Shown here one piece after another: positions 1-13,756 of a stretch of DNA of 33,430 nt; position 1 is the first letter of the stretch; the number at the start of each line of letters is the position of its first letter. The DNA is taken from positions 1-33,430 of the forward strand of contig NW_005434391.1 of assembly GCF_000315625.1 (NCBI RefSeq). Direction: 5' to 3'. This stretch comes from Guillardia theta CCMP2712. Taxonomy: Eukaryota; Protista; Cryptophyta. A program made the translations under genes and the position numbers. The notes under the pieces are model-generated. The model worked only from the letters and a program-made list of their open reading frames with translations. It was not told where the DNA came from and did no database searches.

Positions 1-38
1 ATGCACACTCTTTCTCTACACTCACTCCTCTTGTACGA

Positions 39-83
<45 letters not shown>

Positions 84-3000
84 CCGTGGCAGTATCTACT
101 TTCTTCCCTGGTCTCCCCTTGCTCGCCTCGCTACTCCACTTCCTCCTCCTCTCACCTCAGGGTTCTTGAATCCCAGGAAGAACAGCGGGTGCTTGGGGAT
201 GCCATGCCCGGAGTCAAGCACCTGAGAGGTGGCGCGAGATGAGAAGCGGCCAACGGGGAGTGGAGAGGAAGGAGAACGTGGAGGCGAGAAGTTGAGAACA
301 TTGACAACAAGCAGACAAGTCGTCTTGTTGTCGTCGGTAGCAGACAGAAGGCGAGGATGGCGATCGTGCCGTCGAAATCATGATGATGAGAAGAACAGGA
401 TGGCAAGATGGAACGAAAACAACAAACATGAAGAAAGACGATTTTGTTGTTGATGGGGATGATGTGGACGGACGACGACAAGGTGATGGCAATGACTTCA
501 CCACGTCGATCACGTGAAATAAGGATGGCAACAGAACGAATGGCAGATATCACGATCATGACATCAACAAGCAGAGAGAAACAACGAAGATGTTATGGAG
601 TTGGACGCAATCGAGAGTGAGAGGAAACAAGAAACTTTCGAGACCTGGTCGAGGTAGTAGGTGAAGATCAGGAAAACAACCCACTCCACGGCGAGGATGA
701 TCAAGACAGCCGGCATGCCGCACCTGAGAGACAAGTCAGAGGAGACAGAGAGAGAAAGTGAAGAACAACTATCCAGTGAGATCAAACAAGATAGCCTTCT
801 TCATCGACTCCTCCACATCATCATCGTCATCGTCATCATCATCATCACCATGATCATGATCATCATCATCGTCATCTCCTCCTCCTCCTCCTCCCCTACC
901 TTGGATCATTCGCCATCTTAGCCCACGTCAGCCCCGTCCCTCCGCTCCTCGACGCCGCGTACGCGTACTCGTAGTACTCCGACAGCCCCCGGTAGAAGTT
1001 CCAGAGGGGGAAGATGGTGATGAACGTCCGTAGCGAGTCCGCCACCGTAAGGGAGTTGAAGAAGTTTCCGAAACCCCAGCAGAGCCAGGCGATGAGGGAG
1101 AAGCCCAGGACGAAGAGGGTCGCGCAAATGGAGGAGGTGCGAGCCGAGCGGAGGACTGTCGTCCAGAGGAAGGCGTGCGCGATGGTGTGGTGGATGAAGA
1201 GGAAGAAGAAGACAAAGTGAACGCTCGGCTCCTGCTTGGTGAAGAGGCCGATCCTGTAGCCCGAGGGCAGTTGAGCGAGGGAGGCGATGAGTAGCATGAG
1301 GAAGCAGAAGAGAACGTAGATCAGGAACCAAAAGATGTAGTTGATCACCCAGTATGGCCCGTTCTCTAAGCCCATCATCCTCATTATCACCTGGCAGAAA
1401 AAGTGAGCTAAGGAGGACATGGGAAACTCAAGAGAGGGCTGCACAGGTTCCAGAGATATCATCATCATCTTCACAATCATCATCATCATCATCATAGACA
1501 ACAACAAATCATCATCATCATCATCGTCAACAAGAACCACAACAACATCCTTTCCATCTCATCTCACCCGCAGCTTCATCTCCTTCTCATACACGATCGA
1601 AACCACGATGGTCGGGAACAGCAACGAGAACGCGAGGGTGAAGAAGAAGGGACCCAGCGAGGAGGCGAGGTCAAGGTTCAGCTTCCATGCTGACTGCGGC
1701 ATCTCCTTCACTCCCATCGAACTCCCCGCGTACTGCATCCCCTCCGGCTTCAACTTTGCATTCAGAAACGCGTCGATGGCAGCGCTGACCGACGCCAGGA
1801 TGCGCACCAGGTTCTTAGGACCTCCGCCCCCGGAGCTGGAGGGGAAGGTGGTGTCGTTGTACTGGATCGAGATGTTCAGCAGCTGCTCGTCGGAGTTCCG
1901 GAAGTCGAACGCGCTGATGTACTCCGTGATCGTCTGCTGCTTGGAGGAGAAGCGGTCGAAGAACCCGTTGTACAGCTGGGAGTTGAGCTGGGAGAGGCTC
2001 GCGACCTTGCTGGGCCTTGATGAGATGCACTCGGTCTTGATCCCGCTCATGTTCGCCACCTGGAAGAAGAAGCAGTACCTGGAGGAGGAGGCCGAGCAGT
2101 CGTCGGCGAGCATGTTCAGCAGCCCGCTCGACGTCCCGTTCTTCTCCCAGCAGTTCTGGGTGCACTTGTTGACAACCGGTTTCCAGCTCGCCTTCTGCTC
2201 GGCAGTGAGCACGTGCTGCTGGTTCCACCAGAACTTGGGGTTCGAGCCCAGAGCGTTCTCGATGAAGAAGCTTGTGTCCGGCCATATGGGCGTCGCCCAT
2301 CGCATGCTGGGGTTGTTGAAGAAGCCGATGGGAGAGTCAGGGCGGCAAGTTTGCGGGTCGGAGCAGGTGGTGGAGGCCGGAAGGTCCATCAGGATGCCCC
2401 CCAGGTTGATGTTTGCGGGAAGGAGGAGAGCTGGGATTACAAGCTTGACCAGCTGGAGACCAACACAGAGGCAGGGGATATCGTTGAGCAGGGCAAGGCT
2501 GCGGTGGATGTCAGCTTGGGAGGAAAGGAGAGAAGATGCGAGGAGAGAAGATGAGAGGAGAGAAGATGAGAGGAGAGGAGAGGAGAGGGGAGGAGAGGAA
2601 AGGAGAGGAGAGGAGAGGGGAGGGGGAGGGGAGGAGAGGAGAGGAGAGGAGAGGAGAGGAGAGGAGAGGAGAGGAGAGGAGAGGAGAGGAGAGGAGAGGA
2701 AAAACTTCAAGAGGAGGCAAGTGCAGTGGGGGGGTCAACTGAGGTCCAAGGAAGAATCTATTGCGATCTCATCTCCTCACCTCCCGAGCCCCAAGTTCTT
2801 CTCAGTCTTGAGCATCGACATCAGGGGCTGAGTGTAGAAGTCGCACTGCTGTGCCCACCGACTGCAACAAGTCAGAGTGCCGGCATCGACCTCACAGGAC
2901 CGCTGACGACATGGGAAGAGGAAGGAAAGTAGAGAGTGGAGAAGTAGTGGAAGTAGAGAAGTCGAGAGGAGGGGGAGGAGAGGAGGGGAGCGCAGGAAGG

Positions 3001-4163
3001 GAAGAAGTACTGACAAGACTGGAGCAGAGCAGCGCAGCAATACGGAGAAGGAAGGGGAAGGGGAAGGAGAAGGCGGACGAGGAGGAGAACGAGGAGGAGT
3101 ACTGTAGCTCACCCTTCCACGTCTGAGTAGTATTCCACGTTGTTGACCTTCACAGGGAACGAGGTGATCGAGGGGTACAAGCTCCCGCCCATCCCCGTCA
3201 GCTTCGCCATCACTGCCAGCCCGGCGTCCACCGACACGCACGTGTCGGCCTGCCTCAGCTTCGCCAGCTCTGCCCCCAGCTGTCTCCCCACCTCCTCCCC
3301 AGCAGGAATCGGCCTCGCACAGCGGAACCCGGTCATGCCCTGACTGAGCAAGAGGATGTACTGCGAGAGGGGCCCCATGAGCTTCCCGACAGAGTCCGAG
3401 CTGAGGGCCAGCAGGAACGAGGCCTTGCCCTTGCCATCGGCGAAGATGGCACCCTGCTGCTTCCAGAGCTGGCGGATGTCGGCGATGGCCTGCGAGGAGG
3501 TCTTGCCCTCGGACATGAGGGTGCTGAGGGAGGAGTTGAAGGAGGCGTCCGTGTGGTTCACATTGTCGCTCCAGTAGTTGACACCGAACCGCAAACTGCC
3601 CGAGATGTCAGCCGGGGTGGTAAAGTCGAGGCAGCAGGGCTCGTCGGTGCCCTGGGCCTGCTGGACTATGCGGCAGAGCGCGCTCCTCTGTTGGGGAGAG
3701 AGGTCGTCGAAGGAGCAGCCGACCTTGAGCGGCGGCTTGCCCATGAGGAAGAGGGAGAACATGAGGCTGCTGGTGAGGCTCTCGATGGAGCTCATGTAGG
3801 CGCTAGTGTCCTCTTCCTTGGGGATCAGCTTGCTCGCGACCTTGCTAGCAAAGTCGGTCGTCCCCGTGTACAGGATCGGGTTCTTGGACCGAAACACGTC
3901 GGGGGTGCTGTATCCCAAGTTGGGCTGCTTGATGCCAATGTCGACTGGGCAGAAGGCAAACTGAGTGTTCTCAGCGTACTGGGGGAGGAAACATGTCGGG
4001 TCTCCCTTGCCCGGACAAGTCTTGCTCACTGCGACGCACTGTGCATTGACGTCGACACCGAACTTCTTGATGTAGTCCTGGAGAACACATCAGCTGCGAA
4101 GTTATCATTTTCATCATCATCTCCATCATCATTACTTGTTATCTCTATCATCATCATCATCAC

Positions 4164-4225
<62 letters not shown>

Positions 4226-7200
4226 CAATCAGAAGCAGCAAGATCATCTCAATGATCATTCATCAACACTTCTACGTCTCACGTTCTTAGATGATGCAGG
4301 GAAGAAATAATCAGCACAGTTCTTGCCGTTACCTGCCAGACAAAGTCAACGACCTCACGCCTCCTCCCCCTCCTCCCTCTTCCTCCTCGTCCTCGTCCTT
4401 GTCCTCGTCCTAGTCCTCCCTCCCACTCCTCCTCCTCTCACAATAAGATTTCCCAAAGGAATCGTCGGAAGGGCCGCAGTACGGGCACCGCACCGTCGGC
4501 TGACCGAGGAACACGATCTCCAGGAGGAGCTGGAGGAGGAGGATGATGGCGATGAAGAAGATAGGTACAAGCAGAAGGCAGCAGTTAGTCACCCACTTCC
4601 TGCTCTGCAGCGACAAGTTCTTCTTGAACAGAGCGTTGGCCTGCTGCGCGAAGGGAGTCTGGAGCTTCTCAACCCTCTCCTGGAGTTCCTCCTCTGTCAG
4701 CTTCACCAGCGCAGTCTCCGAGGAAGTGGACGTGAGCCCGGGCGCTGTATCCACCATCACCTGAGCCTGGAACGTGCTGCCAGGAGCTGCTCCCTCCGGT
4801 ACCGTCACGTTGAAGGCCTGTCCCTCAACTTGCACCTCCACCTGCTCTCCTCCTCGCACGCCCTCGGGTACTGTGACCATGATGGACTTGCTCTGCCCTC
4901 CCTTCTCCTCCGTGTCGACCGCGATCAAGTTCCCGTCCTCGTCCGTCCCCCACTTGACCTTGAAGGTGACCCCGGCCGGCGACACCAGCTCGTCCTCATT
5001 GCCCAGCAGGACTCCAACTACCTCCCCTGTCTTGAGGGTCACGTTGGCGGTTCTGTTCATCGACAGCGCCTCCTCCTTCTCGCTCTGCTTCGCGATGTTC
5101 AGGAACACATCCTCTAGAGTCGACATGCTCAGCTGCACGTCCACGATGCAGAGAGACTCTCTGCTGGACTCTAGCTGCTCGAAGAAGCTCTGCAAGGTGG
5201 CATCGTCGGTGTTGGGGACGTTGAAGTGCATATAAGTCTTGGACTCCTCCACCACCTCCACCTTGAACGTCTTCCTGAACATCTCCTTGATCTTAATGCA
5301 GTGCGGGAGGGACTTTGTCATGTTGTCCCCGCAGCTGACGCTGATCCGGTACCCTCCTCCGAAGCGAGACTTGAGTCGCACGCTGCTCCCGATGCACCTG
5401 CCTCAGCCCTCAGGCTACGCCAGCACACGCTTCCTCTCTCACCTCAGTCGACCCTTGGCCATGATGCCGATGCGATCGCCGAGGATGTCCGCCTCCTCCA
5501 TGCTGTGCGTGGTGAGGACGACGCACCTGTCCTGCTTGGCCGCCTCGATCACGTCCCAGACGTGACGTCGGTTGATGGGGTCCATGCCGGTCGTCGGCTC
5601 GTCCAGGTAGACGACGCTGGGATTGCCGATGAGGGAGACGGCGACGGACAGGCGTCGCTTCATCCCTCCTGAGAACGACCCGGCGATCTGATTGGCGGCG
5701 TCGTTGAGCCGAACCTCCTCGATCCGCTTGTCGGCCTCGTGGTACACGGAGTCCGGCTTGATCCCCTTGATGATCGCGAAGATGATCAGGTGCTCCCGAG
5801 CCGTCAGCCTCTCCCACAAGATGTCAAACTGCGGGCAGATACCAATGACGCGCTTGACTCGGTTCATGCCGCTGGGATGGGCGACTGTGTTTCCAAACAC
5901 CAGGGCGTTTCCAGCCGTCGGGGGGAGGAAGCCTGTGAGCATGTTGATAGTCGTAGTCTTCCCAGCTCCGTTGGGCCCCAGCAGGGCGAAGAGCTGGTTC
6001 TTGGCGACCGCAAACCAGGGGGCTTTGACGGCATGGAACGGCTTCCCTCCTCGCTTGAAAGTCTGCTTCAGCCCTCGGATCTCGATCGCCGCCTCCTCCT
6101 TCATCTCTTCGTTTGCCCTCGCCTTCACGCTCGCTTCCTCCGCCAGCACGTCCTCGTCAGTGCTCTCCTCGATCACAAACGTGGGGTCGTCATGGATGTG
6201 TGCTTCTGTGAAGCCCCAGTACGCAGGCGTCAGGAAGTACCAGGGCGCTTTCTTCACGCCCATGGCGTCAGGGAGAACGTTCTCGAGGTAGAGGCCGACG
6301 AGCGAGTACAGCACGTAAAGGCCGATGTACCAGCTCCAGGAGGTGCCGACGGAGTAAGAAGGGTTACACTGGTTGGGGTTGATGGTGCAGTAGGAGTAGG
6401 CCTCGCTGAAGCGGATCCCGAGGTCCTTGTCCGTCGCCGTTAGTGCCCCGAGGTCTGCCAGGTTCTTGACGAAGAGGGAGGGGGGGAAGAAGGAGAACAG
6501 AGGCTCTGCCGCCCGGTCCCCTCCGCTCGACTTGACTGTATAGGCTCCTTGGGTGATGTTGTACTGGTAGGAGAAGGGAGCTTGCCCCTTGTACAGCCCG
6601 TAAGGGAAGCCGAAGACGACGACGAAGTAGAAGATGAAGGCTATCAGGAAGACAGCAAACCCCACAGTGACAGCCTGCGCAGCTCGTCGGAGGAAAGAGC
6701 CGAGGAGGAAGGCCAGGCCGATCATGGACTGGCCGAACATCCAGAAGGTGATGAGGAGAATCCCAAAGTCGTTCTTGAGGAACAGGCGAAACTGGAAGGC
6801 CATGCCGAACAGGACGAGGAGGAAGGAGTAGAGGAGCGCCATGAAGGACTGCAACGACAGGTGAAAGTCAGAGGATGGTGGGGAGGTGGTGGGGAGGAGC
6901 GCACAGACCTGGAACAAGTGCCAAGACATCCAGTAGGAGAAATCTTTCAGCCCCATTGCGGAGAGCACTTGCCGCAGCTTCAGCTCCTTCTCAGCCACGA
7001 TCTCGTTCATCTGGATGACAAAGGGGAACATGGAGCAGGCCAGGAGAAAGAGAGGAGCGATCTGACCCTCGAACGTCGACACGACGAAAGCGGGGTGAGC
7101 AAACTCTTGGATTGCGATCTGTACTTTGAAGTTTTCATCTTTCAAGAACACATTCTTGGCGATCTCTCTGTGCGCGACGAGCTGCATGGGAACCGTGTAC

Positions 7201-8257
7201 TCCATGTATGGACTCGTCCACTCTCCCCTTACCACGTCCGCTGACGTTCCGTTCTGCTGCACGAGCTGCGAAAATAGCCATGGATCAATATCGGTATTTA
7301 GCAGGGAGGGAGGAAAGGAGAGAGGGAGGGAGGAGGGAGGGAGGGAGGGAGGGAGGGGTAAGGAAGCCTACGCACAAAGGTGAAGGTGTTGTTGTTCGGC
7401 GAGTAGAAGACATAACTCCCCTGCACGTAGTTCATGTTCTTGAGGATGAATCTGGAAACCAGGTGAGTGACGGAGAGGGGTTCAGGCGTATAGTCACTCA
7501 CTTGTCCATCTCTGTCTCGTTCAGGAACCCAACGACCTGACAGCACTCTCAGCCAGATCTGCGAGAGGAAGACGCTCGGACCTTTTCGGGAAGGATCGGG
7601 TAGACGTCCTTGGAGGACACCGACGACCCGTTGTGCTTCATCAGCCCACGAACCACCTTGGTACCCATCAGCACAGCTCGACACCAGCTGAACAGACCTT
7701 GTGCACTCGGAACATCTCGCAGCATGTCTGACAACTCGGTACCTGGTGCCCCTGGTCAACGATACCGCAAACACGCTCGCGGGGTTCGAATCGATATCAC
7801 ATTGTCCGTCAGGCAGTTGGCTGACTGGCACGCAGGGCAGGCATCCTTCAAGCTGGTATACGGACAACCTTTAGCTCACCTGCTTCCCCTTCTCAGCCTC
7901 AGCTCACCTCTGCGGCAGATCGGTGAAGAAATCGCTGAAAGCGGCGTAATCCTTGGAAGGGTTGAACTCGTTGTTCGGGGCAGGGGCGTAACTGAAAGTC
8001 ACACAGCCCTTCTCGACCTTGGGGATGCAGTCAGGGATCCCATGCTTCTCGGTAGGAACAGGGTCGGGGACATCCTTGACCGAGGACTCCTGAGAGAAAC
8101 GGGCCTTGATCCCCTCATTACACAGGTAGATAAGGAGGATGAAGAAGAGGGACGCGAAGATCCTGAGGAAAGTGGAGGTGTAGTTCCTCTTGGCGAGCAC
8201 GAGGTTCTTGTAAGTGAGGGCAGAGATCTGCCTTGCGATGGTTACCAGACCGTCCAT
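1..8257 (-). CDS. ABCA: ABC transporter subfamily A (ABCA), full-size multi-exon gene; 3' end (expected NBD2) lies beyond the left window edge
   Basis: ATG at 8257 (MDGLVTIARQISALTYKNLVLAKRN...). NBD1 in 5443-6080 has Walker A GPNGAGKTT, CPQFDILW, signature FSGGMKRRLS, Walker B VVYLDEPTTGMDP and TTHSMEEAD. ABCA TMD motifs: EIVAEKELKLRQVLSAMGL and SIVYEKEMKLR|VIMRMMGL. GT-AG-bounded exons read by eye: 7908-8257, several small uncertain exons in 7376-7868, 6909-7265, 5443-6848, 4442-5397, 4283-4332, 3113-4077, ~2781-2902, 1568-~2452, 900-1390, 645-723, 156-221, and a probable polyQ exon at ~26-118. Confidence 0.93.
40..80. repeat. (CTG)n/(CAG)n microsatellite, probably polyQ in an ABCA linker exon
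   Basis: About 13 CTG units. The minus frame reads ...KKVDTATEEQQQQ...LVQE. Confidence 0.7.
2517..2700. repeat. (GAGAG)n pentanucleotide tract in an ABCA intron
   Basis: Visible gagag/gagga tandem repeats, which generate the spurious SSPLL and EERRG ORFs. Confidence 0.9.
4146..4225. repeat. (CAT)n intronic microsatellite (similar tracts at ~817-870 and ~1457-1525)
   Basis: Tandem cat units inside ABCA introns. Confidence 0.9.
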
Positions 8258-9904: not shown

Positions 9905-11264
9905 TCATCGCTTCACAACGATGTCTACTATCAAGTGCTCCTCCTTCCTCCCCCTCCATCTTCCCTCGTTAACTCCAGGTGTACGCCAGGTCCCATTCCG
10001 TCCACAGCATGTAGCCGAAGAGTTGCGTCGTTGACTCGTCTCCGTAGCTGCGAGCACATACTTCAAACGCCGAGGAGGAGCAGGAGCAGGAGCAGGACGA
10101 GTAGCAGGGGAAGGAGGAGGAAGAGGAGGAGAAAGAGAAGGAGGAGAAAGAGGAGGAGGAGGAGGAGGAGGAGGAGGAGGTAGTGGTGGTGGAGGGTATA
10201 AGTCACCTCTCGACGCAGCTGCGTAGAAAGGTTTCCAGTTGCTTCTGCAATCAAGAAGAATCAGAGGAGGAGGAGGGGAGTTCGAGGTGTTCATAAGGAA
10301 ATTATGGAGGAAGGGGAAAGTGGTGGTGGAGGAGGCGGAGAAGTTGGATGGTGGACGAAGTAGCGGCAAGGAGAGAAGGAGGAGGAGGAGGAGGAGAAGG
10401 AGGAGAAGGAGAAGGAGAAGGAGGAGAAGGAGGAGAAGGAGAAGGAGAAGGAGAAGGAGGAGGAGAAGGAGAAGGAGGAAGGGGAGGAAGTGTGGAAGAG
10501 GTAAGGAAAGAGGAGGGGGGGAGGGATTTTACCTTGTTAGTGCAGNNNNNNNNNNNNNNNNNNNNNNNNNNNNNNNNNNNNNNNNNNNNNNNNNNNNNNN
10601 NNNNNNNNNNNNNNNNNNNNNNNNNNNNNNNNNNNNNNNNNNNNNTCATCAAACTCGACGAACGTGTTCCTCCCGAGAGTTAAAAATTTCCAAAGCGTCC
10701 TCCGCCAGTGGGTATGACTTCCCATGAGGAGGAGGGAGGAGGATGTAGAAAATAGGACGAAAGGAGGGGGGTGGGGGGGAAGGGAGGAAGGAGAGAGGGG
10801 ATAGGAGGAGGTGGGAGGTAGCAGGTAGGAGGAGGAGGGAGGGATGGGGTAGGAGGGAATGAGGTAGGGAGGAAGAGGGAGGAAGGAGGAGGGAGGAAAA
10901 CAAGAGAGGAGGAGCCGAGCATAGTTGCAAAAGGGACGTGAACAGGAAGAGGGCGATTGAGCTCGAGCAATGGAGCAGGGGACGGGAGCACGAGGGTCAG
11001 TAGAGATCATGAGATTGGAGGGAAAAGAGGAGGAAACCGGTGGGTTTTTCTCATAGATGTTCAACTCCAACTGCTCAAAGTCAGGAGGAGAGGGTAATGG
11101 ATGCAACTAAAACTTCACCTTGTCGAGGACTTCGGCGAGCATGGAGCTGTTAGTGGGCCGGGCAGGCAGGGGCTTCCTGCAATCGAAGGGGAAGCAGTCA
11201 GGTGAACAAGAGACAGAAAGACAGGAGGAGGGCATGCATAACGATAGAAGTCGAGAGCGAGGGA

Positions 11265-11335
<71 letters not shown>

Positions 11336-13756
11336 CGACGACGACGACGACGACGACGATGTCCGGCCGGCCAGTTGAAAGNNNNNNNNNNNNNNNNNNN
11401 NNNNNNNNNNNNNNNNNNNNNNNNNNNNNNNNNNNNNNNNNNNNNNNNNNNNNNNNNNNNNNNNNNNNNNNNNNNNNNNNNNNNNNNNNNNNNNNNNNNN
11501 NNNNNNNNNNNNNNNNNNNNNNNNNNNNNNNNNNNNNNNNNNNNNNNNNNNNNNNNNNNNNNNNNNNNNNNNNNNNNNNNNNNNNNNNNNNNNNNNNNNN
11601 NNNNNNNNNNNNNNNNNNNNNNNNNNNNNNNNNNNNNNNNNNNNNNNNNNNNNNNNNNNNNNNNNNNNNNNNNNNNNNNNNNNNNNNNNNNNNNNNNNNN
11701 NNNNNNNNNNNNNNNNNNNNNNNNNNNNNNNNNNNNNNNNNNNNNNNNNNNNNNNNNNNNNNNNNNNNNNNNNNNNNNNNNNNNNNNNNNNNNNNNNNNN
11801 NNNNNNNNNNNNNNNNNNNNNNNNNNNNNNNNNNNNNNNNNNNNNNNNNNNNNNNNNNNNNNNNNNNNNNNNNGATGATGATGATGATGAAGAAGAAGAA
11901 GAAGAAGAAGAAGATGATGATGATGATGATGATGATGAGCAGTAGTGGGAACCCAAATAAGCTCACCAGAATTGAGAAGTTTTTGGCAGGTTGGATAGGA
12001 AGACGTCTTTCCGATTGTATCTGCTGTGAAACTGAATCGACCACCTGTAGTAACTCCATCAAGGACTGCTGCTTTCTCCTCCTCCCCTCCTCTGACACCT
12101 GTGCCCGTAATACCACTCTCGGCATTTCAGGAACTCTTCCCATGCTTCTTCTGGAATGTGATCTACATGGAGTGAGCCCTCTACCTCGCGTGAGGGGGAG
12201 AGAGATGGAGAGAAGGAGGGAGGGAGAAGGAGGGAGGGAGAAGGAGGGAGGGAGAAGGAGGGAGGGAGAAGGAGGAGGAGAGAGGGAGGAAGAGGAGGAG
12301 GAGGAGAGAGGGAGGAGGAGGAGGAGGAGGAGGAGGAGGAGGGGGGAAGTGACGAGAGAAAGGGGCTGAGGGAAGAGGAGAAGGGAAGGCGACCTGTGCG
12401 GATGGGGCTGAAGAGGAGGGAGAGCACTGCTTCCTTTGCCTCCCTCGCAGCCTTCAAGGGTCCCTGGAGCCTGAAGTTCAGCGGAGCATGGCAGCAGGGG
12501 AGGGCAGCAAGGTATGGCAGCAAGGCGGAGGAGGAGGATGAGCAGGAGGAGGAGGAGGAGGAGGAGGTACAGGAGGAGGAGGAGGTACAGGAGGAGGAGG
12601 AGGAGGAGGAGGAGGAGGAGGAGGAGGAGGAGGAAGTACAGAAGCAGGAGGAGGAGCAGCAAGACTACCTTGATACGGACCCTCCAGAAGAACAAGGGAT
12701 GTGGGGATCCCTCCTGGACGTCGTATGCTTCATCAGCCGCAAGGGTCATGGTAGATGTTTGAGACGCACCAGCATCAGGAAGTTCGCGGGTCAGGTTGAC
12801 CTCCATCAGGCCCCTCCCCTTGACAAGCTTGCCCTTGTGGGGACGAGCTGGGAAGGACTCGGATCAGCCCCCCGCAGAGCGAGGCAGCACATACCGTCCA
12901 GCTCCACTTGCACGTCGAACTTCTCGAAGAATTGAGATCCGACTATGTCAAACTAGACAAGCTGTCAACTCAAGCAGCCAGCAGGAGCACAGCTGACCGG
13001 CAGCAGGTGCTTCTCGACTCCAACGGCAGGCAGCCACAAACATTTCTCAGCTTCTTCCTCCTGGAGGGGGGAAGGGGTGAGCCACGGCCAGTCAACCCGC
13101 AAGCTTCTGAGATCTCACCGTCCAGTCGTCGAAGAAAATTTGCTCGGAGGTGGCTGGGAAGATCCTCCAGCTGATGTCTAGCATGGGAGGGAGACGTGTC
13201 AGGGAGCTGGGAAACTCTCCGTCTCTTTAGTCACCATCGTCGTCCTCCAGGCGGTGCTGCTGGCATGGAAGGGTATCGCCAGGAGGTAGGGAGAGGGATT
13301 TGGCGTCCGCAATAGAGTCGAAGTACTCAGCCATGGCCGCCATGATCTGCCGCAGGTTCTCACAACCAGTTGCCCTGCCTACTCCTCCTCCTCTTCTCCC
13401 GACCTTCTCAGCTTCCGCTCTGAATTTCCTGATCCTGATCGTGATGATTTTCCTCTCCAGCTTGCCGAGGCTCTGGAGGGGACAGGGTATGATGTCAGTT
13501 ACGGACGGGATTCAATGACCATGAGAATCGAATCGTAGGTCATCAAAATTGTTTGAGCCGATGGATAGAAACGACAATCGAACGAAAGGATAGAAAGATG
13601 ATGAAAACTACGAGACTGCGAGTGAGGGGAACATGAAATCACAAGATTTTGTCAAGTGTTGTTTCAGTCCACCAGCAGAGCCAACACGACACGCGAGAGA
13701 GGAGGAGGAGGAGGAGGAGGAGGAGGAGGAGAAGGAGAAGGCGGAGGAAGAGGAGT

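What the first reader, a model, noticed from the sequence alone, without database searches (positions are those of the whole stretch)
4442..5397. Natural in-frame fusion of the two plant-type ABCA half-transporter clades (Rosetta-stone hint of heterodimers)
Seen: one uninterrupted exon runs from the end of NBD1 (CIGSSVRLKSRFGGGY...STLEDVFLNIAKQSEKEE...VTFKVKWGTDEDGNL) into a new TMD start (TPFAQQANALFKKNLSLQSRKW...LLVPIFF) with no stop or intron. Recalled family knowledge: the N-half resembles Arabidopsis ABCA2/ABCA9-type half transporters (KNL.L..RN...TFL..FAS.FFILLI start; NQLF.LLGPNGAGKTTTIN; C-tail V.W..DE.G.L). The C-half resembles the ABCA3-8/12 type (QANAL..KNL..Q.R; VKEMP...L.LD.AS..GP.FFT; VYEK...LR.IM.M.GL..GPYW). 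In land plants these are separate half-size genes. Inference: a fused gene would suggest the two classes act as heterodimers, or that the plant halves arose by fission of such a full-size ABCA.
Basis: partly seen in the sequence, partly recalled or inferred. Interest (0 to 1): 0.72.

Follow-up and report, generated by a model that had tools for sequence, protein, structure and literature searches.

The report
Unsplit form of plant half-size ABCA transporters
This cryptophyte alga makes one full-size ABCA (lipid-type) transporter whose front half is the closest relative of one class of plant half-size ABCA proteins and whose back half is the closest relative of the other class. This suggests the plant halves came from splitting such a gene and may work as mixed pairs.

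Summary
On the minus strand, exon 5397-4442 is one open frame. It runs from the end of NBD1, through a regulatory domain and a linker of about 80 residues, into the first helix of TMD2. Spliced RNA contigs from two studies cross it. A second gene copy (contig C233) keeps it gap-free with dN/dS 0.25. At least six other protist mRNAs of 2017-2617 aa have the same junction.

The N half is 42-46% identical over its full length to plant ABCA2/11-type half transporters (Pfam ABCA11_C). The C half matches the ABCA7/12 type (Pfam ABCA12_C), with 60-64% identity in the NBD2 tail. A mixture-model ML tree of 56 half-units gives:
- N-type versus C-type split: 100/96.
- Fused N halves plus green clade I: 100/99.
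- Fused C halves plus green clade II: 100/100.

Both groups are nested among ordinary full-size ABCA halves. AU tests reject a single green half-size clade (p 0.002) and reject non-nesting (p 0.0003).

The most parsimonious reading is that the plant halves arose by fission and the cryptophyte keeps the unsplit gene. Heterodimers in plants remain a prediction. NBD2 of this copy lies beyond the contig start. The paralogue's full protein is already in UniProt (A0A7S4NY30).

The parts
7908..8257 (-). First coding exon: ATG at 8257-8255, N-terminus and TM1 (KNLVLAKRNY..FASLFFILLI), start of extracellular domain 1.
   Evidence: ORF. ATG and GT donor read. tblastn match to the Hanusia phi homologue P0001 residues 61-173.
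7373..7435 (-). Small exon of extracellular domain 1. Limits are approximate and further small exons between 7435 and 7907 were not resolved.
   Evidence: tblastn to P0001 residues 226-246.
6909..7265 (-). Exon: end of extracellular domain 1 and TM2 region (IVAEKELKLRQVLSAMGL).
   Evidence: RNA contigs X1 record 6 and X2 record 16, and the joint 6848|6909. Frame open.
6849..6908 (-). 60-nt in-frame GT..AG intron with no stop codon. It lies hidden inside the 607-aa ORF.
   Evidence: Joint 'skips 60' in X1 and X2.
5443..6848 (-). Exon with TM3-TM6 of TMD1 and NBD1 (Walker A GPNGAGKTT, signature SGGMKRR, Walker B LDEPTTG, H-loop TTHSMEE).
   Evidence: Pfam ABC2_membrane_3 and ABC_tran. 44-46% identity to plant ABCA2 over 468-490 aa. 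Best solved relatives are NBD1 of human ABCA3, ABCA4, ABCA1 and ABCA7.
5398..5442 (-). 45-nt GT..AG intron between GRLR and CIGSS.
   Evidence: Sequence. Joint 'skips 45' in X1, depth 1113.
4442..5397 (-). Junction exon (the finding). It holds the NBD1 tail, an R1-like/ABCA11_C regulatory domain, the V.W..D..G.L motif, a linker of about 80 aa with a doubled VxVPEG..G motif, and then the TMD2 start (F..QANALFKKNL.LQ) with TM7.
   Evidence: 318 open codons. Pfam ABCA11_C 28.1 bits and R1_ABCA1 20.5 bits. RNA contigs span it. Gap-free alignment to the C233 copy with dN/dS 0.25, linker 0.26. Colinear with plant clade I C-termini and clade II N-termini.
4283..4332 (-). 50-nt exon (NGKNCADYFFPASSKN), start of extracellular domain 2.
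   Evidence: Joints 4330|4440 and 4076|4282, each with a 1-2 nt ambiguity. Frame open.
3113..4076 (-). Exon of the large Cys-rich extracellular domain 2.
   Evidence: X2 record 15 and X1 record 2. 30-35% identity to the same region of fused homologues P0405, P0407 and P0406.
2781..2861 (-). 81-nt exon of extracellular domain 2.
   Evidence: X2 record 15 and the joint 2498|2781.
1568..2498 (-). Exon: end of extracellular domain 2 and TM8 (VKEMP..LDLASSLGPFFFT..VYEKEMKLR).
   Evidence: RNA contigs. Donor site read. 33-40% identity to plant ABCA7-like halves.
900..1390 (-). Exon with TM9-TM12 of TMD2 (IMRMMGLENGPYW...).
   Evidence: Loose end of X1 at 1564 carries this exon's sequence. Splice sites read. 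77% identity to P0406, 52% to P0285 and about 30% to plant clade II.
645..723 (-). Exon (CGMPAVLIILAVEWVVF..YLDQ), end of TMD2.
   Evidence: tblastn to P0406 residues 1546-1573. AG/GT sites.
156..221 (-). Last exon held by the contig (VLDSGHGIPKHPLFFLGFKNPE), the TMD2-NBD2 connector. The gene then runs off the contig start, so NBD2 is missing here.
   Evidence: tblastn to P0406 residues 1572-1594. Splice sites. The window is C283:1-33430. No other NBD2 of this type is in the assembly.

Best explanation
The window holds the first roughly 1,600 codons of an expressed, multi-exon, minus-strand gene of the cryptophyte Guillardia theta. It encodes a full-size ABCA-type ABC transporter: TMD1-NBD1-R1-linker-TMD2, with NBD2-R2 lying beyond the contig start. 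The junction exon is ordinary coding sequence that links the two halves in one polypeptide. The gene belongs to a distinct full-size ABCA lineage found in G. theta (two old paralogues), Hanusia phi and several uncultured marine protists. Its N half is the sister group of the green-lineage half-size ABCA clade that contains AtABCA2 and ABCA11-like proteins. Its C half is the sister group of the clade that contains the ABCA7/8/12-like proteins. Both pairs of groups sit inside the N-type and C-type halves of ordinary full-size ABCAs, and the same amoebozoan full-size proteins are next out on both sides. The simplest history is therefore one ancestral full-size gene that was cut in the linker in the green lineage and kept whole in the cryptophyte-type lineage (inferred). 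By homology, the protein should work as a single-chain ATP-driven lipid or fatty-acyl transporter. NBD1 has every catalytic motif, and so does NBD2 of the paralogue. The wider consequence is that a plant clade I half and a clade II half together would rebuild the ancestral transporter, so they are predicted to pair as heterodimers (inferred, not tested).
For: The gene and junction are real:
- The frame is open.
- Spliced RNA contigs from two studies cross NBD1 into TMD2, and every intron is GT..AG.
- The C233 paralogue aligns over all 318 codons without a gap, with dN/dS 0.25 overall and 0.26 in the linker at dS about 0.9-1.4.
- The paralogue's transcript-derived protein P0406 (UniRef A0A7S4NY30, 1950 aa) carries TMD1-NBD1-linker-TMD2-NBD2.
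- P0403-P0409, P0455 and P0461 (2017-2617 aa, on roughly 8-kb intron-less contigs) have the same junction.

The family is ABCA: Pfam ABC2_membrane_3 and ABC_tran, and the best solved relatives are human ABCA3, ABCA4, ABCA1 and ABCA7.

Relationship of the halves:
- The N-half exon is 42-46% identical at 100% coverage to plant ABCA2 and ABCA11-like proteins, all of which carry PF25158. The junction exon also hits PF25158.
- The NBD2 tail of the lineage is 60-64% identical to green ABCA7/8-like halves carrying PF24526, against 38-52% to full-size ABCAs.
- The window's own TMD2 exons score 80-100 bits against clade II, against 40-60 bits for other C halves.
- Careful IQ-TREE (LG+C20 PMSF, 56 half-units): N|C split 100/96, fused N plus clade I 100/99, fused C plus clade II 100/100, amoebozoan full-size next out on both sides.
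- The 75-row tree with full-length fused proteins shows the same pattern with mirrored inner topology.
- NBD-only and TMD-only trees agree.
- AU tests: one green half-size clade is rejected (delta lnL 337, p 0.002). Monophyly of ordinary full-size N halves is rejected (delta lnL 49, p 0.0003).

Break point: clade I proteins end 30-60 aa after the V.W..D..G.L motif, and clade II proteins begin 10-25 aa before F..QANAL.KNL.FQ. These positions are exactly the two sides of the fused linker.

Hints of functional coupling:
- Arabidopsis ABCA2 lies head-to-head with a clade II gene, and a second such pair exists in A. suecica.
- The Chlamydomonas inventory reports similar induction of a clade I gene and two clade II genes under N and S starvation. 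It also states that AtABCA9 and AtABCA10 are both ER-located and both affect seed oil (PMC9605142).
Against: - NBD2 of this very copy is not in the assembly. Its existence is inferred from the paralogue and from transcripts that run on past the last exon.
- The direction of change (fission, not fusion) rests on parsimony over an unrooted paralogue tree.
- On the C side the nesting nodes are only moderately supported (91/71 and 90/78).
- The group used in the second AU test was chosen after I had seen the tree.
- Many full-size rows come from unnamed metagenomic organisms. No named AtABCA1 or animal ABCA sequence could be placed in the tree.
- The plant I/II gene pairs are head-to-head rather than tandem, so they are not simple fission relics. 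No adjacency was found within 10 kb in Marchantia, Nymphaea or a pedinophyte.
- Published single-gene phenotypes of AtABCA9 and AtABCA10 do not show pairing.
- Substrate and membrane location of the cryptophyte protein are unknown.
Confidence: 0.8

Rival explanations
1. Secondary fusion. The ancestor of green algae and the cryptophyte-type lineage already had two separate half-size genes, one N-type and one C-type. These were joined into one gene in the cryptophyte-type lineage, so the gene is a true Rosetta-stone fusion as the reader first put it.
For: The fused N and fused C groups are each sister to the green clades, not paraphyletic around them. The tree alone therefore cannot say which state is older at that node. 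The fused lineage has its own linker of about 80 aa with no counterpart in plants or in Pfam.
Against: The next outgroup on both sides is the same set of full-size amoebozoan proteins. The whole group is nested among full-size halves (AU test). This history therefore needs a fission followed by a re-fusion in the correct N-to-C order, against a single fission.
Confidence: 0.17
2. Ordinary full-size ABCA with no special tie to the plant half transporters. On this view the motif resemblances are general ABCA features.
For: The overall architecture is the standard ABCA one.
Against: Full-length identity of 42-46% to plant ABCA2-type proteins, and 60-64% to the ABCA7-type in the NBD2 tail, is clearly above the values for other full-size ABCAs. 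Clade supports are 100/99 and 100/100. Separate NBD and TMD trees agree. The clade-specific Pfam tails ABCA11_C and ABCA12_C are present.
Confidence: 0.02
3. Artefact. Two neighbouring half-size genes are read together because of read-through transcription, mis-assembly or chance absence of a stop codon.
For: The public gene model of the paralogue (GUITHDRAFT_82405, P0002, 1046 aa) is wrong at this spot. It reads the junction exon and then runs into the intron. One MMETSP 'complete' ORF of 1031 aa (P0004) looks half-size.
Against: The 318 codons are conserved without gaps at dN/dS 0.25 between paralogues whose dS is near 1. Spliced contigs from two studies span the junction. The same junction occurs in six or more other species' long mRNAs. 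P0004 has a hybrid NBD, NBD1-like before and NBD2-like after the shared SGGMKRRLSVA signature. It also shares a 90% cluster with a 2615-aa protein, so it looks like a collapsed assembly.
Confidence: 0.01

Closest known systems
Plant and green-algal half-size ABCA 'clade I' (AtABCA2, ABCA11-like, and per PMC9605142 also AtABCA9 and CrABCA4; Pfam tail PF25158 ABCA11_C)
   Same: The N half aligns end to end (TMD1, NBD1, regulatory domain, V.W..D..G.L motif) at 42-46% identity. It shares the ABCA11_C tail and is the sister group in all trees.
   Different: The plant proteins stop 30-60 residues after the tail motif. Here the chain goes on through a linker of about 80 aa into a second TMD.
Plant and green-algal half-size ABCA 'clade II' (ABCA7/8/12-like; the remaining Arabidopsis halves per PMC9605142; Pfam tail PF24526 ABCA12_C)
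   Same: The C half starts with the same F..QANAL.KNL.FQ...TNCCL N-terminal motif. Its TMD2 exons are 30-40% identical and the lineage's NBD2 tail is 60-64% identical. The paralogue and homologues carry ABCA12_C. It is the sister group in all trees.
   Different: The plant proteins begin with their own start codon 10-25 residues before that motif. Here there is no start codon, and the extracellular domain 2 is longer. NBD2 of this copy cannot be seen.
G. theta proteins already in databases: GUITHDRAFT_82405 (P0002) and UniRef A0A7S4NY30 / A0A7S4L3Y2 (P0406, 1950 aa)
   Same: They are products of the paralogous gene on contig C233, 70-84% identical exon by exon with the same architecture and junction.
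   Different: They come from a different locus (dS about 1). P0002 is a truncated model that ends in an intron. P0406 lacks the N-terminus. None carries a functional or evolutionary annotation.
Solved human full-size ABCAs (ABCA3 7w01, ABCA4 7lkp, ABCA1 5xjy/7tby, ABCA7 8edw)
   Same: They share the domain order, the large extracellular domains after TM1 and TM7, and the regulatory domain after each NBD. The N-half exon hits their NBD1 region at E 1e-90 to 1e-110.
   Different: They are much more distant. No sequence of theirs could be put into the tree, and the linker and the plant-type tails are not shared.
Amoebozoan full-size ABCAs (Cavostelium apophysatum P0121 and P0277; Planoprotostelium fungivorum P0280)
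   Same: They are the nearest ordinary full-size relatives of both halves. N groups with N and C groups with C.
   Different: They lack the ABCA11_C hit, and ABCA12_C scores below its cut-off in P0121. They have a shorter linker and lie outside the fused-plus-green clades.

Membership tests
ABCA subfamily, full-size (TMD-NBD)2 type | Forward order TMD1-NBD1-TMD2-NBD2 in one polypeptide | tested here: inconclusive
   TMD1-NBD1-linker-TMD2 is shown in the window and in RNA. NBD2 lies beyond the contig start. It is present in the paralogue's transcript protein P0406.
ABCA subfamily, full-size (TMD-NBD)2 type | ABC-2 type membrane domain with a large extracellular domain between the first two helices of each TMD | tested here: met
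   Pfam ABC2_membrane_3 at 44.7 bits. Exons 4332-1568 encode roughly 500-550 residues between TM7 and the VKEMP/TM8 region.
ABCA subfamily, full-size (TMD-NBD)2 type | Canonical NBD motifs and ABCA-type regulatory domain after the NBD | tested here: met
   ABC_tran at 95.3 bits. Walker A, signature, Walker B and H-loop were read in the translation. R1_ABCA1 scores 20.5 bits (below its cut-off of 27) and ABCA11_C scores 28.1 bits (above its cut-off of 27).
ABCA subfamily, full-size (TMD-NBD)2 type | Closest solved relatives are ABCA proteins | tested here: met
   ABCA3, ABCA4, ABCA1 and ABCA7 at E 4.5e-110 to 7e-90. The next hits are 60 or more orders of magnitude weaker.
Green-lineage half-size ABCA clade I (ABCA2/9/11 type) | Phylogenetic grouping and PF25158 ABCA11_C tail | tested here: met
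   Clade support 100/99. 99 in the 75-row tree. PF25158 hit on junction-exon residues 92-127.
Green-lineage half-size ABCA clade I (ABCA2/9/11 type) | Half-size architecture: one TMD, one NBD, and a stop after the tail | tested here: not met
   There is no stop. The frame continues into TMD2. The N half is therefore a relative of this family, and the protein is not a member.
Green-lineage half-size ABCA clade II (ABCA3-8/10/12 type) | Phylogenetic grouping of TMD2 (and of NBD2 in homologues) and the N-terminal F..QANAL.KNL.FQ motif | tested here: met
   The window's TMD2 exons fall in the 100/100 clade. The motif is aligned.
Green-lineage half-size ABCA clade II (ABCA3-8/10/12 type) | PF24526 ABCA12_C tail after the NBD | not testable with these tools
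   This part of the copy is off the contig. The tail is present in paralogue P0406 (precomputed Pfam list) and in lineage members P0284 and P0004.
Green-lineage half-size ABCA clade II (ABCA3-8/10/12 type) | Half-size architecture with its own start codon | tested here: not met
   TMD2 is preceded in frame by NBD1 and the linker within one exon.

The most novel reading that the evidence does not exclude
Plant and green-algal half-size ABCA transporters are the two pieces of one ancestral full-size ABCA that was cut in its inter-half linker. They still work as obligate clade I / clade II heterodimers (for example ABCA9 with ABCA10, ABCA2 with ABCA3, ABCA11 with ABCA12). The cryptophyte gene is the living unsplit form. 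It could serve as a single-chain stand-in for structure and transport studies.
Probability: 0.4. Interest if true: 0.75.

Novelty: new variant of a known kind. Interest (0 to 1): 0.6.

Why it matters
Half-size ABC transporters must dimerise, and the partners of the plant ABCA halves are unknown. Work on AtABCA9, AtABCA10 and the Chlamydomonas homologue, which are targets for raising seed and algal oil, treats them one gene at a time.

The papers I could read give a different picture. One places ABCA halves nearer to the C-terminal halves and proposes that full-size ABCAs arose by 'heterofusion' (PMC4649718, PMC2984421). An older study that I recall but could not read here placed them as a third clade.

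The result here assigns one plant clade to the N-type and the other to the C-type halves. A natural single-chain version exists whose linker marks the break point. This gives a concrete, cheap test: co-express or co-purify clade I with clade II partners, and compare double with single mutants. It also gives a candidate single-polypeptide protein for structural work.

In 8 literature searches I found no paper stating this. Several key papers are in subscription journals and could not be read.

Tried and rejected
1. Whole-library HMMER search with the N-half ORF. The top 150 were mostly ordinary full-size ABCAs ranked by their two NBDs. None had a matching C half, so it gave outgroups and no orthologues. 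The 607-aa query also contained the 20 residues of the in-frame 60-nt intron, which did no harm.
2. Raw-read RNA run X18. Only 46 reads were laid, almost all on the GA-rich simple repeat at about 4379-4424. It gave no information on starts, ends or strand. The huge depth there in all runs is a repeat artefact.
3. Pfam scan of the linker in three lineage members. Nothing scored below E 0.01.
4. Gene adjacency as a fission relic. Arabidopsis and A. suecica have I/II pairs, but they are head-to-head. Marchantia, a pedinophyte and Nymphaea show no clade II neighbour within 10 kb, and Cryptomeria was not on record. I kept this only as a hint of co-regulation.
5. Literature. Eight searches and six papers read. 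One id (PMC9070825, the ABCA10 paper) is not held.
6. Complex prediction was not sent. With a 1000-residue limit only NBD-tail modules fit. The controls replace the partner with unrelated proteins, so a pass could not tell hetero- from homodimers and would hardly change my odds.
Exons were used one by one by reference, and database proteins (P0406, P0284, P0403-P0409) stood in for the full length.
Full report
**What is in the window**

The window is contig C283 of an 87.1-Mb, 669-contig assembly, from its first base. The organism is the cryptophyte Guillardia theta. The closest database proteins are GUITHDRAFT_82405, which lies on a 58,463-nt contig (the length of C233), and a Hanusia phi transcript. 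Earlier notes of this scan say the same.

The finding lies in a minus-strand gene with many short GT..AG introns. I fixed the exons from open frames, from splice sites read in the sequence and from spliced RNA contigs:
- CDS start at ATG 8257.
- Exons 8257-7908, a few small unresolved exons, then 7265-6909, 6848-5443, 5397-4442, 4332-4283, 4076-3113, 2861-2781, 2498-1568, 1390-900, 723-645 and 221-156.
- After exon 221-156 the contig ends.

Pfam finds ABC2_membrane_3 and ABC_tran in exon 6848-5443. In the junction exon it finds ABCA11_C, plus R1_ABCA1 below its cut-off.

Exon 5397-4442 is 318 open codons. It runs from CIGSS (the strand after the NBD1 H-loop region) through a regulatory domain and the motif V.W..DEDGNL. 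A linker of about 80 residues with a doubled VxVPEG..G motif follows, and then F..QANALFKKNLSLQ and a hydrophobic helix.

In run X2 one 2626-nt spliced contig covers 5106-4440 and continues through four more exons to 1634. Run X1, from another study, shows the same joints and bridges the 45-nt intron at 5442-5398. Depths are level across the junction, at about 740-1100 in X1. The raw-read run gave no usable coverage, so starts, ends and strand cannot be read directly.

**A second copy and other species**

Contig C233 carries a paralogue with the same single junction exon and, further on, nine small NBD2 exons. The two junction exons align over all 318 codons without a gap. dN/dS is 0.25 overall and 0.26 in the linker, with dS of about 0.9-1.4. 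These are therefore old paralogues under purifying selection and not alleles.

The paralogue's transcript-derived protein is in UniProt (A0A7S4NY30, 1950 aa, N-terminally incomplete). It has TMD1-NBD1-linker-TMD2-NBD2. The genome annotation of that gene (P0002, 1046 aa) reads the junction exon and then runs into the intron.

The same junction is present in P0033 and P0284. It is also present in the full-length proteins P0403, P0404, P0405, P0407, P0408 and P0409. P0455 and P0461 share 90% clusters with lineage members. These proteins are 2017-2617 aa and lie on roughly 8-kb contigs without introns, which look like mRNA assemblies.

**What the halves resemble**

- The N-half exon is 42-46% identical over its full length to plant half-size proteins named ABCA2 or ABCA11-like, all carrying PF25158.
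- For the C half I could not use a long reference from the window. I used the NBD2 tail of a lineage member (P0004:852-1031), which is nearly identical to the C233 NBD2 exons. It is 60-64% identical to green-lineage half-size proteins named ABCA7, ABCA8 or ABC2-like, all carrying PF24526. It is 38-52% identical to full-size ABCAs.
- The window's own TMD2 exons then hit these clade II proteins at 30-40% identity and 80-100 bits. Other full-size C halves score 40-60 bits.
- The two green clades match the two half-size branches described for Chlamydomonas and Arabidopsis (PMC9605142).

**Trees**

I cut every protein into half-units, each made of 340 residues upstream of an NBD plus the NBD. The window's exons entered as separate rows and were never joined.

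- A FastTree of 125 units, a careful IQ-TREE under LG+C20 PMSF of 56 units and a quick IQ-TREE of 75 units including the full-length fused proteins all agree.
- In the careful tree the N-type versus C-type split has support 100/96.
- Fused N halves plus green clade I (including Mesostigma, Neomeris and a pedinophyte) have 100/99.
- Fused C halves plus green clade II have 100/100.
- On both sides the next relatives are the same full-size amoebozoan proteins (Cavostelium, Planoprotostelium), followed by two further full-size groups in the same order.
- Within the fused lineage the N and C subtrees mirror each other.
- NBD-only and TMD-only trees recover the same groups with supports of 89-99.
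- Holding all green half-size proteins together costs 337 log-likelihood units (p-AU 0.002).
- Holding the ordinary full-size N halves together, so that the half-size/fused group is not nested, costs 49 units (p-AU 0.0003). I chose this group after seeing the tree.

**Where the break lies**

In an alignment of the junction, plant clade I proteins follow the fused proteins up to the V.W..D..G.L motif and end 30-60 residues later. Clade II proteins start 10-25 residues before F..QANAL.KNL.FQ and then follow the fused TMD2. The region between is the lineage-specific linker, which has no Pfam match.

**Reading**

The gene is a standard-architecture, expressed ABCA transporter, so the object itself is a known kind. 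What is new is its position. It is the unsplit counterpart of both green half-size clades, which are N-type and C-type respectively.

One fission in the green lineage explains the data with the fewest events. A fission followed by re-fusion in the cryptophyte-type lineage cannot be excluded.

This differs from the papers I could read, which place ABCA halves nearer the C-terminal halves and derive full-size ABCAs by 'heterofusion' (PMC2984421; PMC4649718). From memory, Peelman et al. 2003 placed the halves in a clade of their own, but I could not read that paper here.

Function is inferred from relatives. According to PMC9605142, the clade I members AtABCA9 and CrABCA4 and the clade II member AtABCA10 all act in ER lipid supply for storage oil.

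**Heterodimer corollary**

If the two green clades are the two halves of one ancestral transporter, a mixed pair is the default expectation. There are three supporting hints:
- Head-to-head I/II gene pairs in Arabidopsis and A. suecica.
- Parallel induction of CrABCA4, CrABCA5 and CrABCA7.
- Matching location and phenotype of AtABCA9 and AtABCA10.

Against it:
- The pairs are not conserved in Marchantia, Nymphaea or a pedinophyte.
- In the PMC9605142 grouping, Arabidopsis has 3 clade I genes against 8 clade II genes.

No binding test was run.

**Limits**

- NBD2 of this copy is unassembled.
- Many outgroup rows are unnamed, and no named AtABCA1 or animal ABCA is in the tree.
- C-side nesting nodes have moderate support.
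- The spliced protein was not joined or searched as a whole, by instruction.

Noticed in passing
window 6849-6908 and 5398-5442: Two very short introns of 60 nt and 45 nt, both multiples of three. The 60-nt one has no stop codon, so it hides inside an apparently continuous 607-aa ORF and adds 20 false residues to any ORF-based translation.
   Followed up: yes
L001:2956-6711 (G000:C233), protein P0002: The public model GUITHDRAFT_82405 (1046 aa) of the paralogue is truncated. It reads the junction exon, misses the donor site and ends at a stop inside the intron. It also skips part of TMD1. The real product is about 2,100 aa.
   Followed up: yes
window 1-221 and L002 (G000:C233:54001-58463): Both paralogues sit at contig ends with their 3' (NBD2) ends pointing outward. 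C283 starts inside the gene, and C233 ends about 30 codons before the stop. They may be tail-to-tail neighbours whose NBD2 regions broke the assembly. The NBD2 of the C283 copy is nowhere in the assembly.
   Followed up: partly
protein P0004 (MMETSP, 1031 aa) and P0455 (2615 aa): A 'complete' half-size-looking transcript ORF has a hybrid NBD. It is NBD1-like up to the SGGMKRRLSVA signature and NBD2-like after it, and it ends with the ABCA12_C tail. It clusters at 90% with a 2615-aa fused protein, so it is probably an assembly collapse across the repeated signature. A real recombinant isoform was not excluded.
   Followed up: partly
L003:3864-14487 (A. thaliana chr 3) and L006:5481-14072 (A. 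suecica): Clade I and clade II half-size ABCA genes lie head-to-head, about 1.8 kb and 0.4 kb apart. This fits a shared bidirectional promoter. No such neighbour was seen within 10 kb in Marchantia (L005), a pedinophyte (L007) or Nymphaea (L008), where there are two tandem clade I genes.
   Followed up: partly
window 4379-4424 (inside intron 4333-4441): A GA/CT-rich simple repeat draws enormous depth (up to about 32,000 summed contig depth) and many loose ends in all four runs. This is a repeat artefact and not expression of the intron.
   Followed up: partly
window 4647-4949 (minus strand), and the same region of P0405, P0407, P0403: The inter-half linker holds a doubled short motif (VxVPEG..G..V.V...G..F.VxVPEG..PG..F). 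It is conserved across the fused lineage, matches no Pfam family and is absent from plant halves. Its role is unknown.
   Followed up: partly
G000:C15:662815-666162 (-) and G000:C8:892478-896503 (+): Two further two-NBD ABCA-like loci in the same genome, with about 40% NBD identity to this gene. C15 has very long open frames (783 and 966 aa). They were not examined further.
   Followed up: no
window 10500-11900: Runs of N (assembly gaps) flanked by long trinucleotide and poly-codon microsatellites. Composition drops to 24% GC in the 11-12 kb bin because of the Ns.
   Followed up: no
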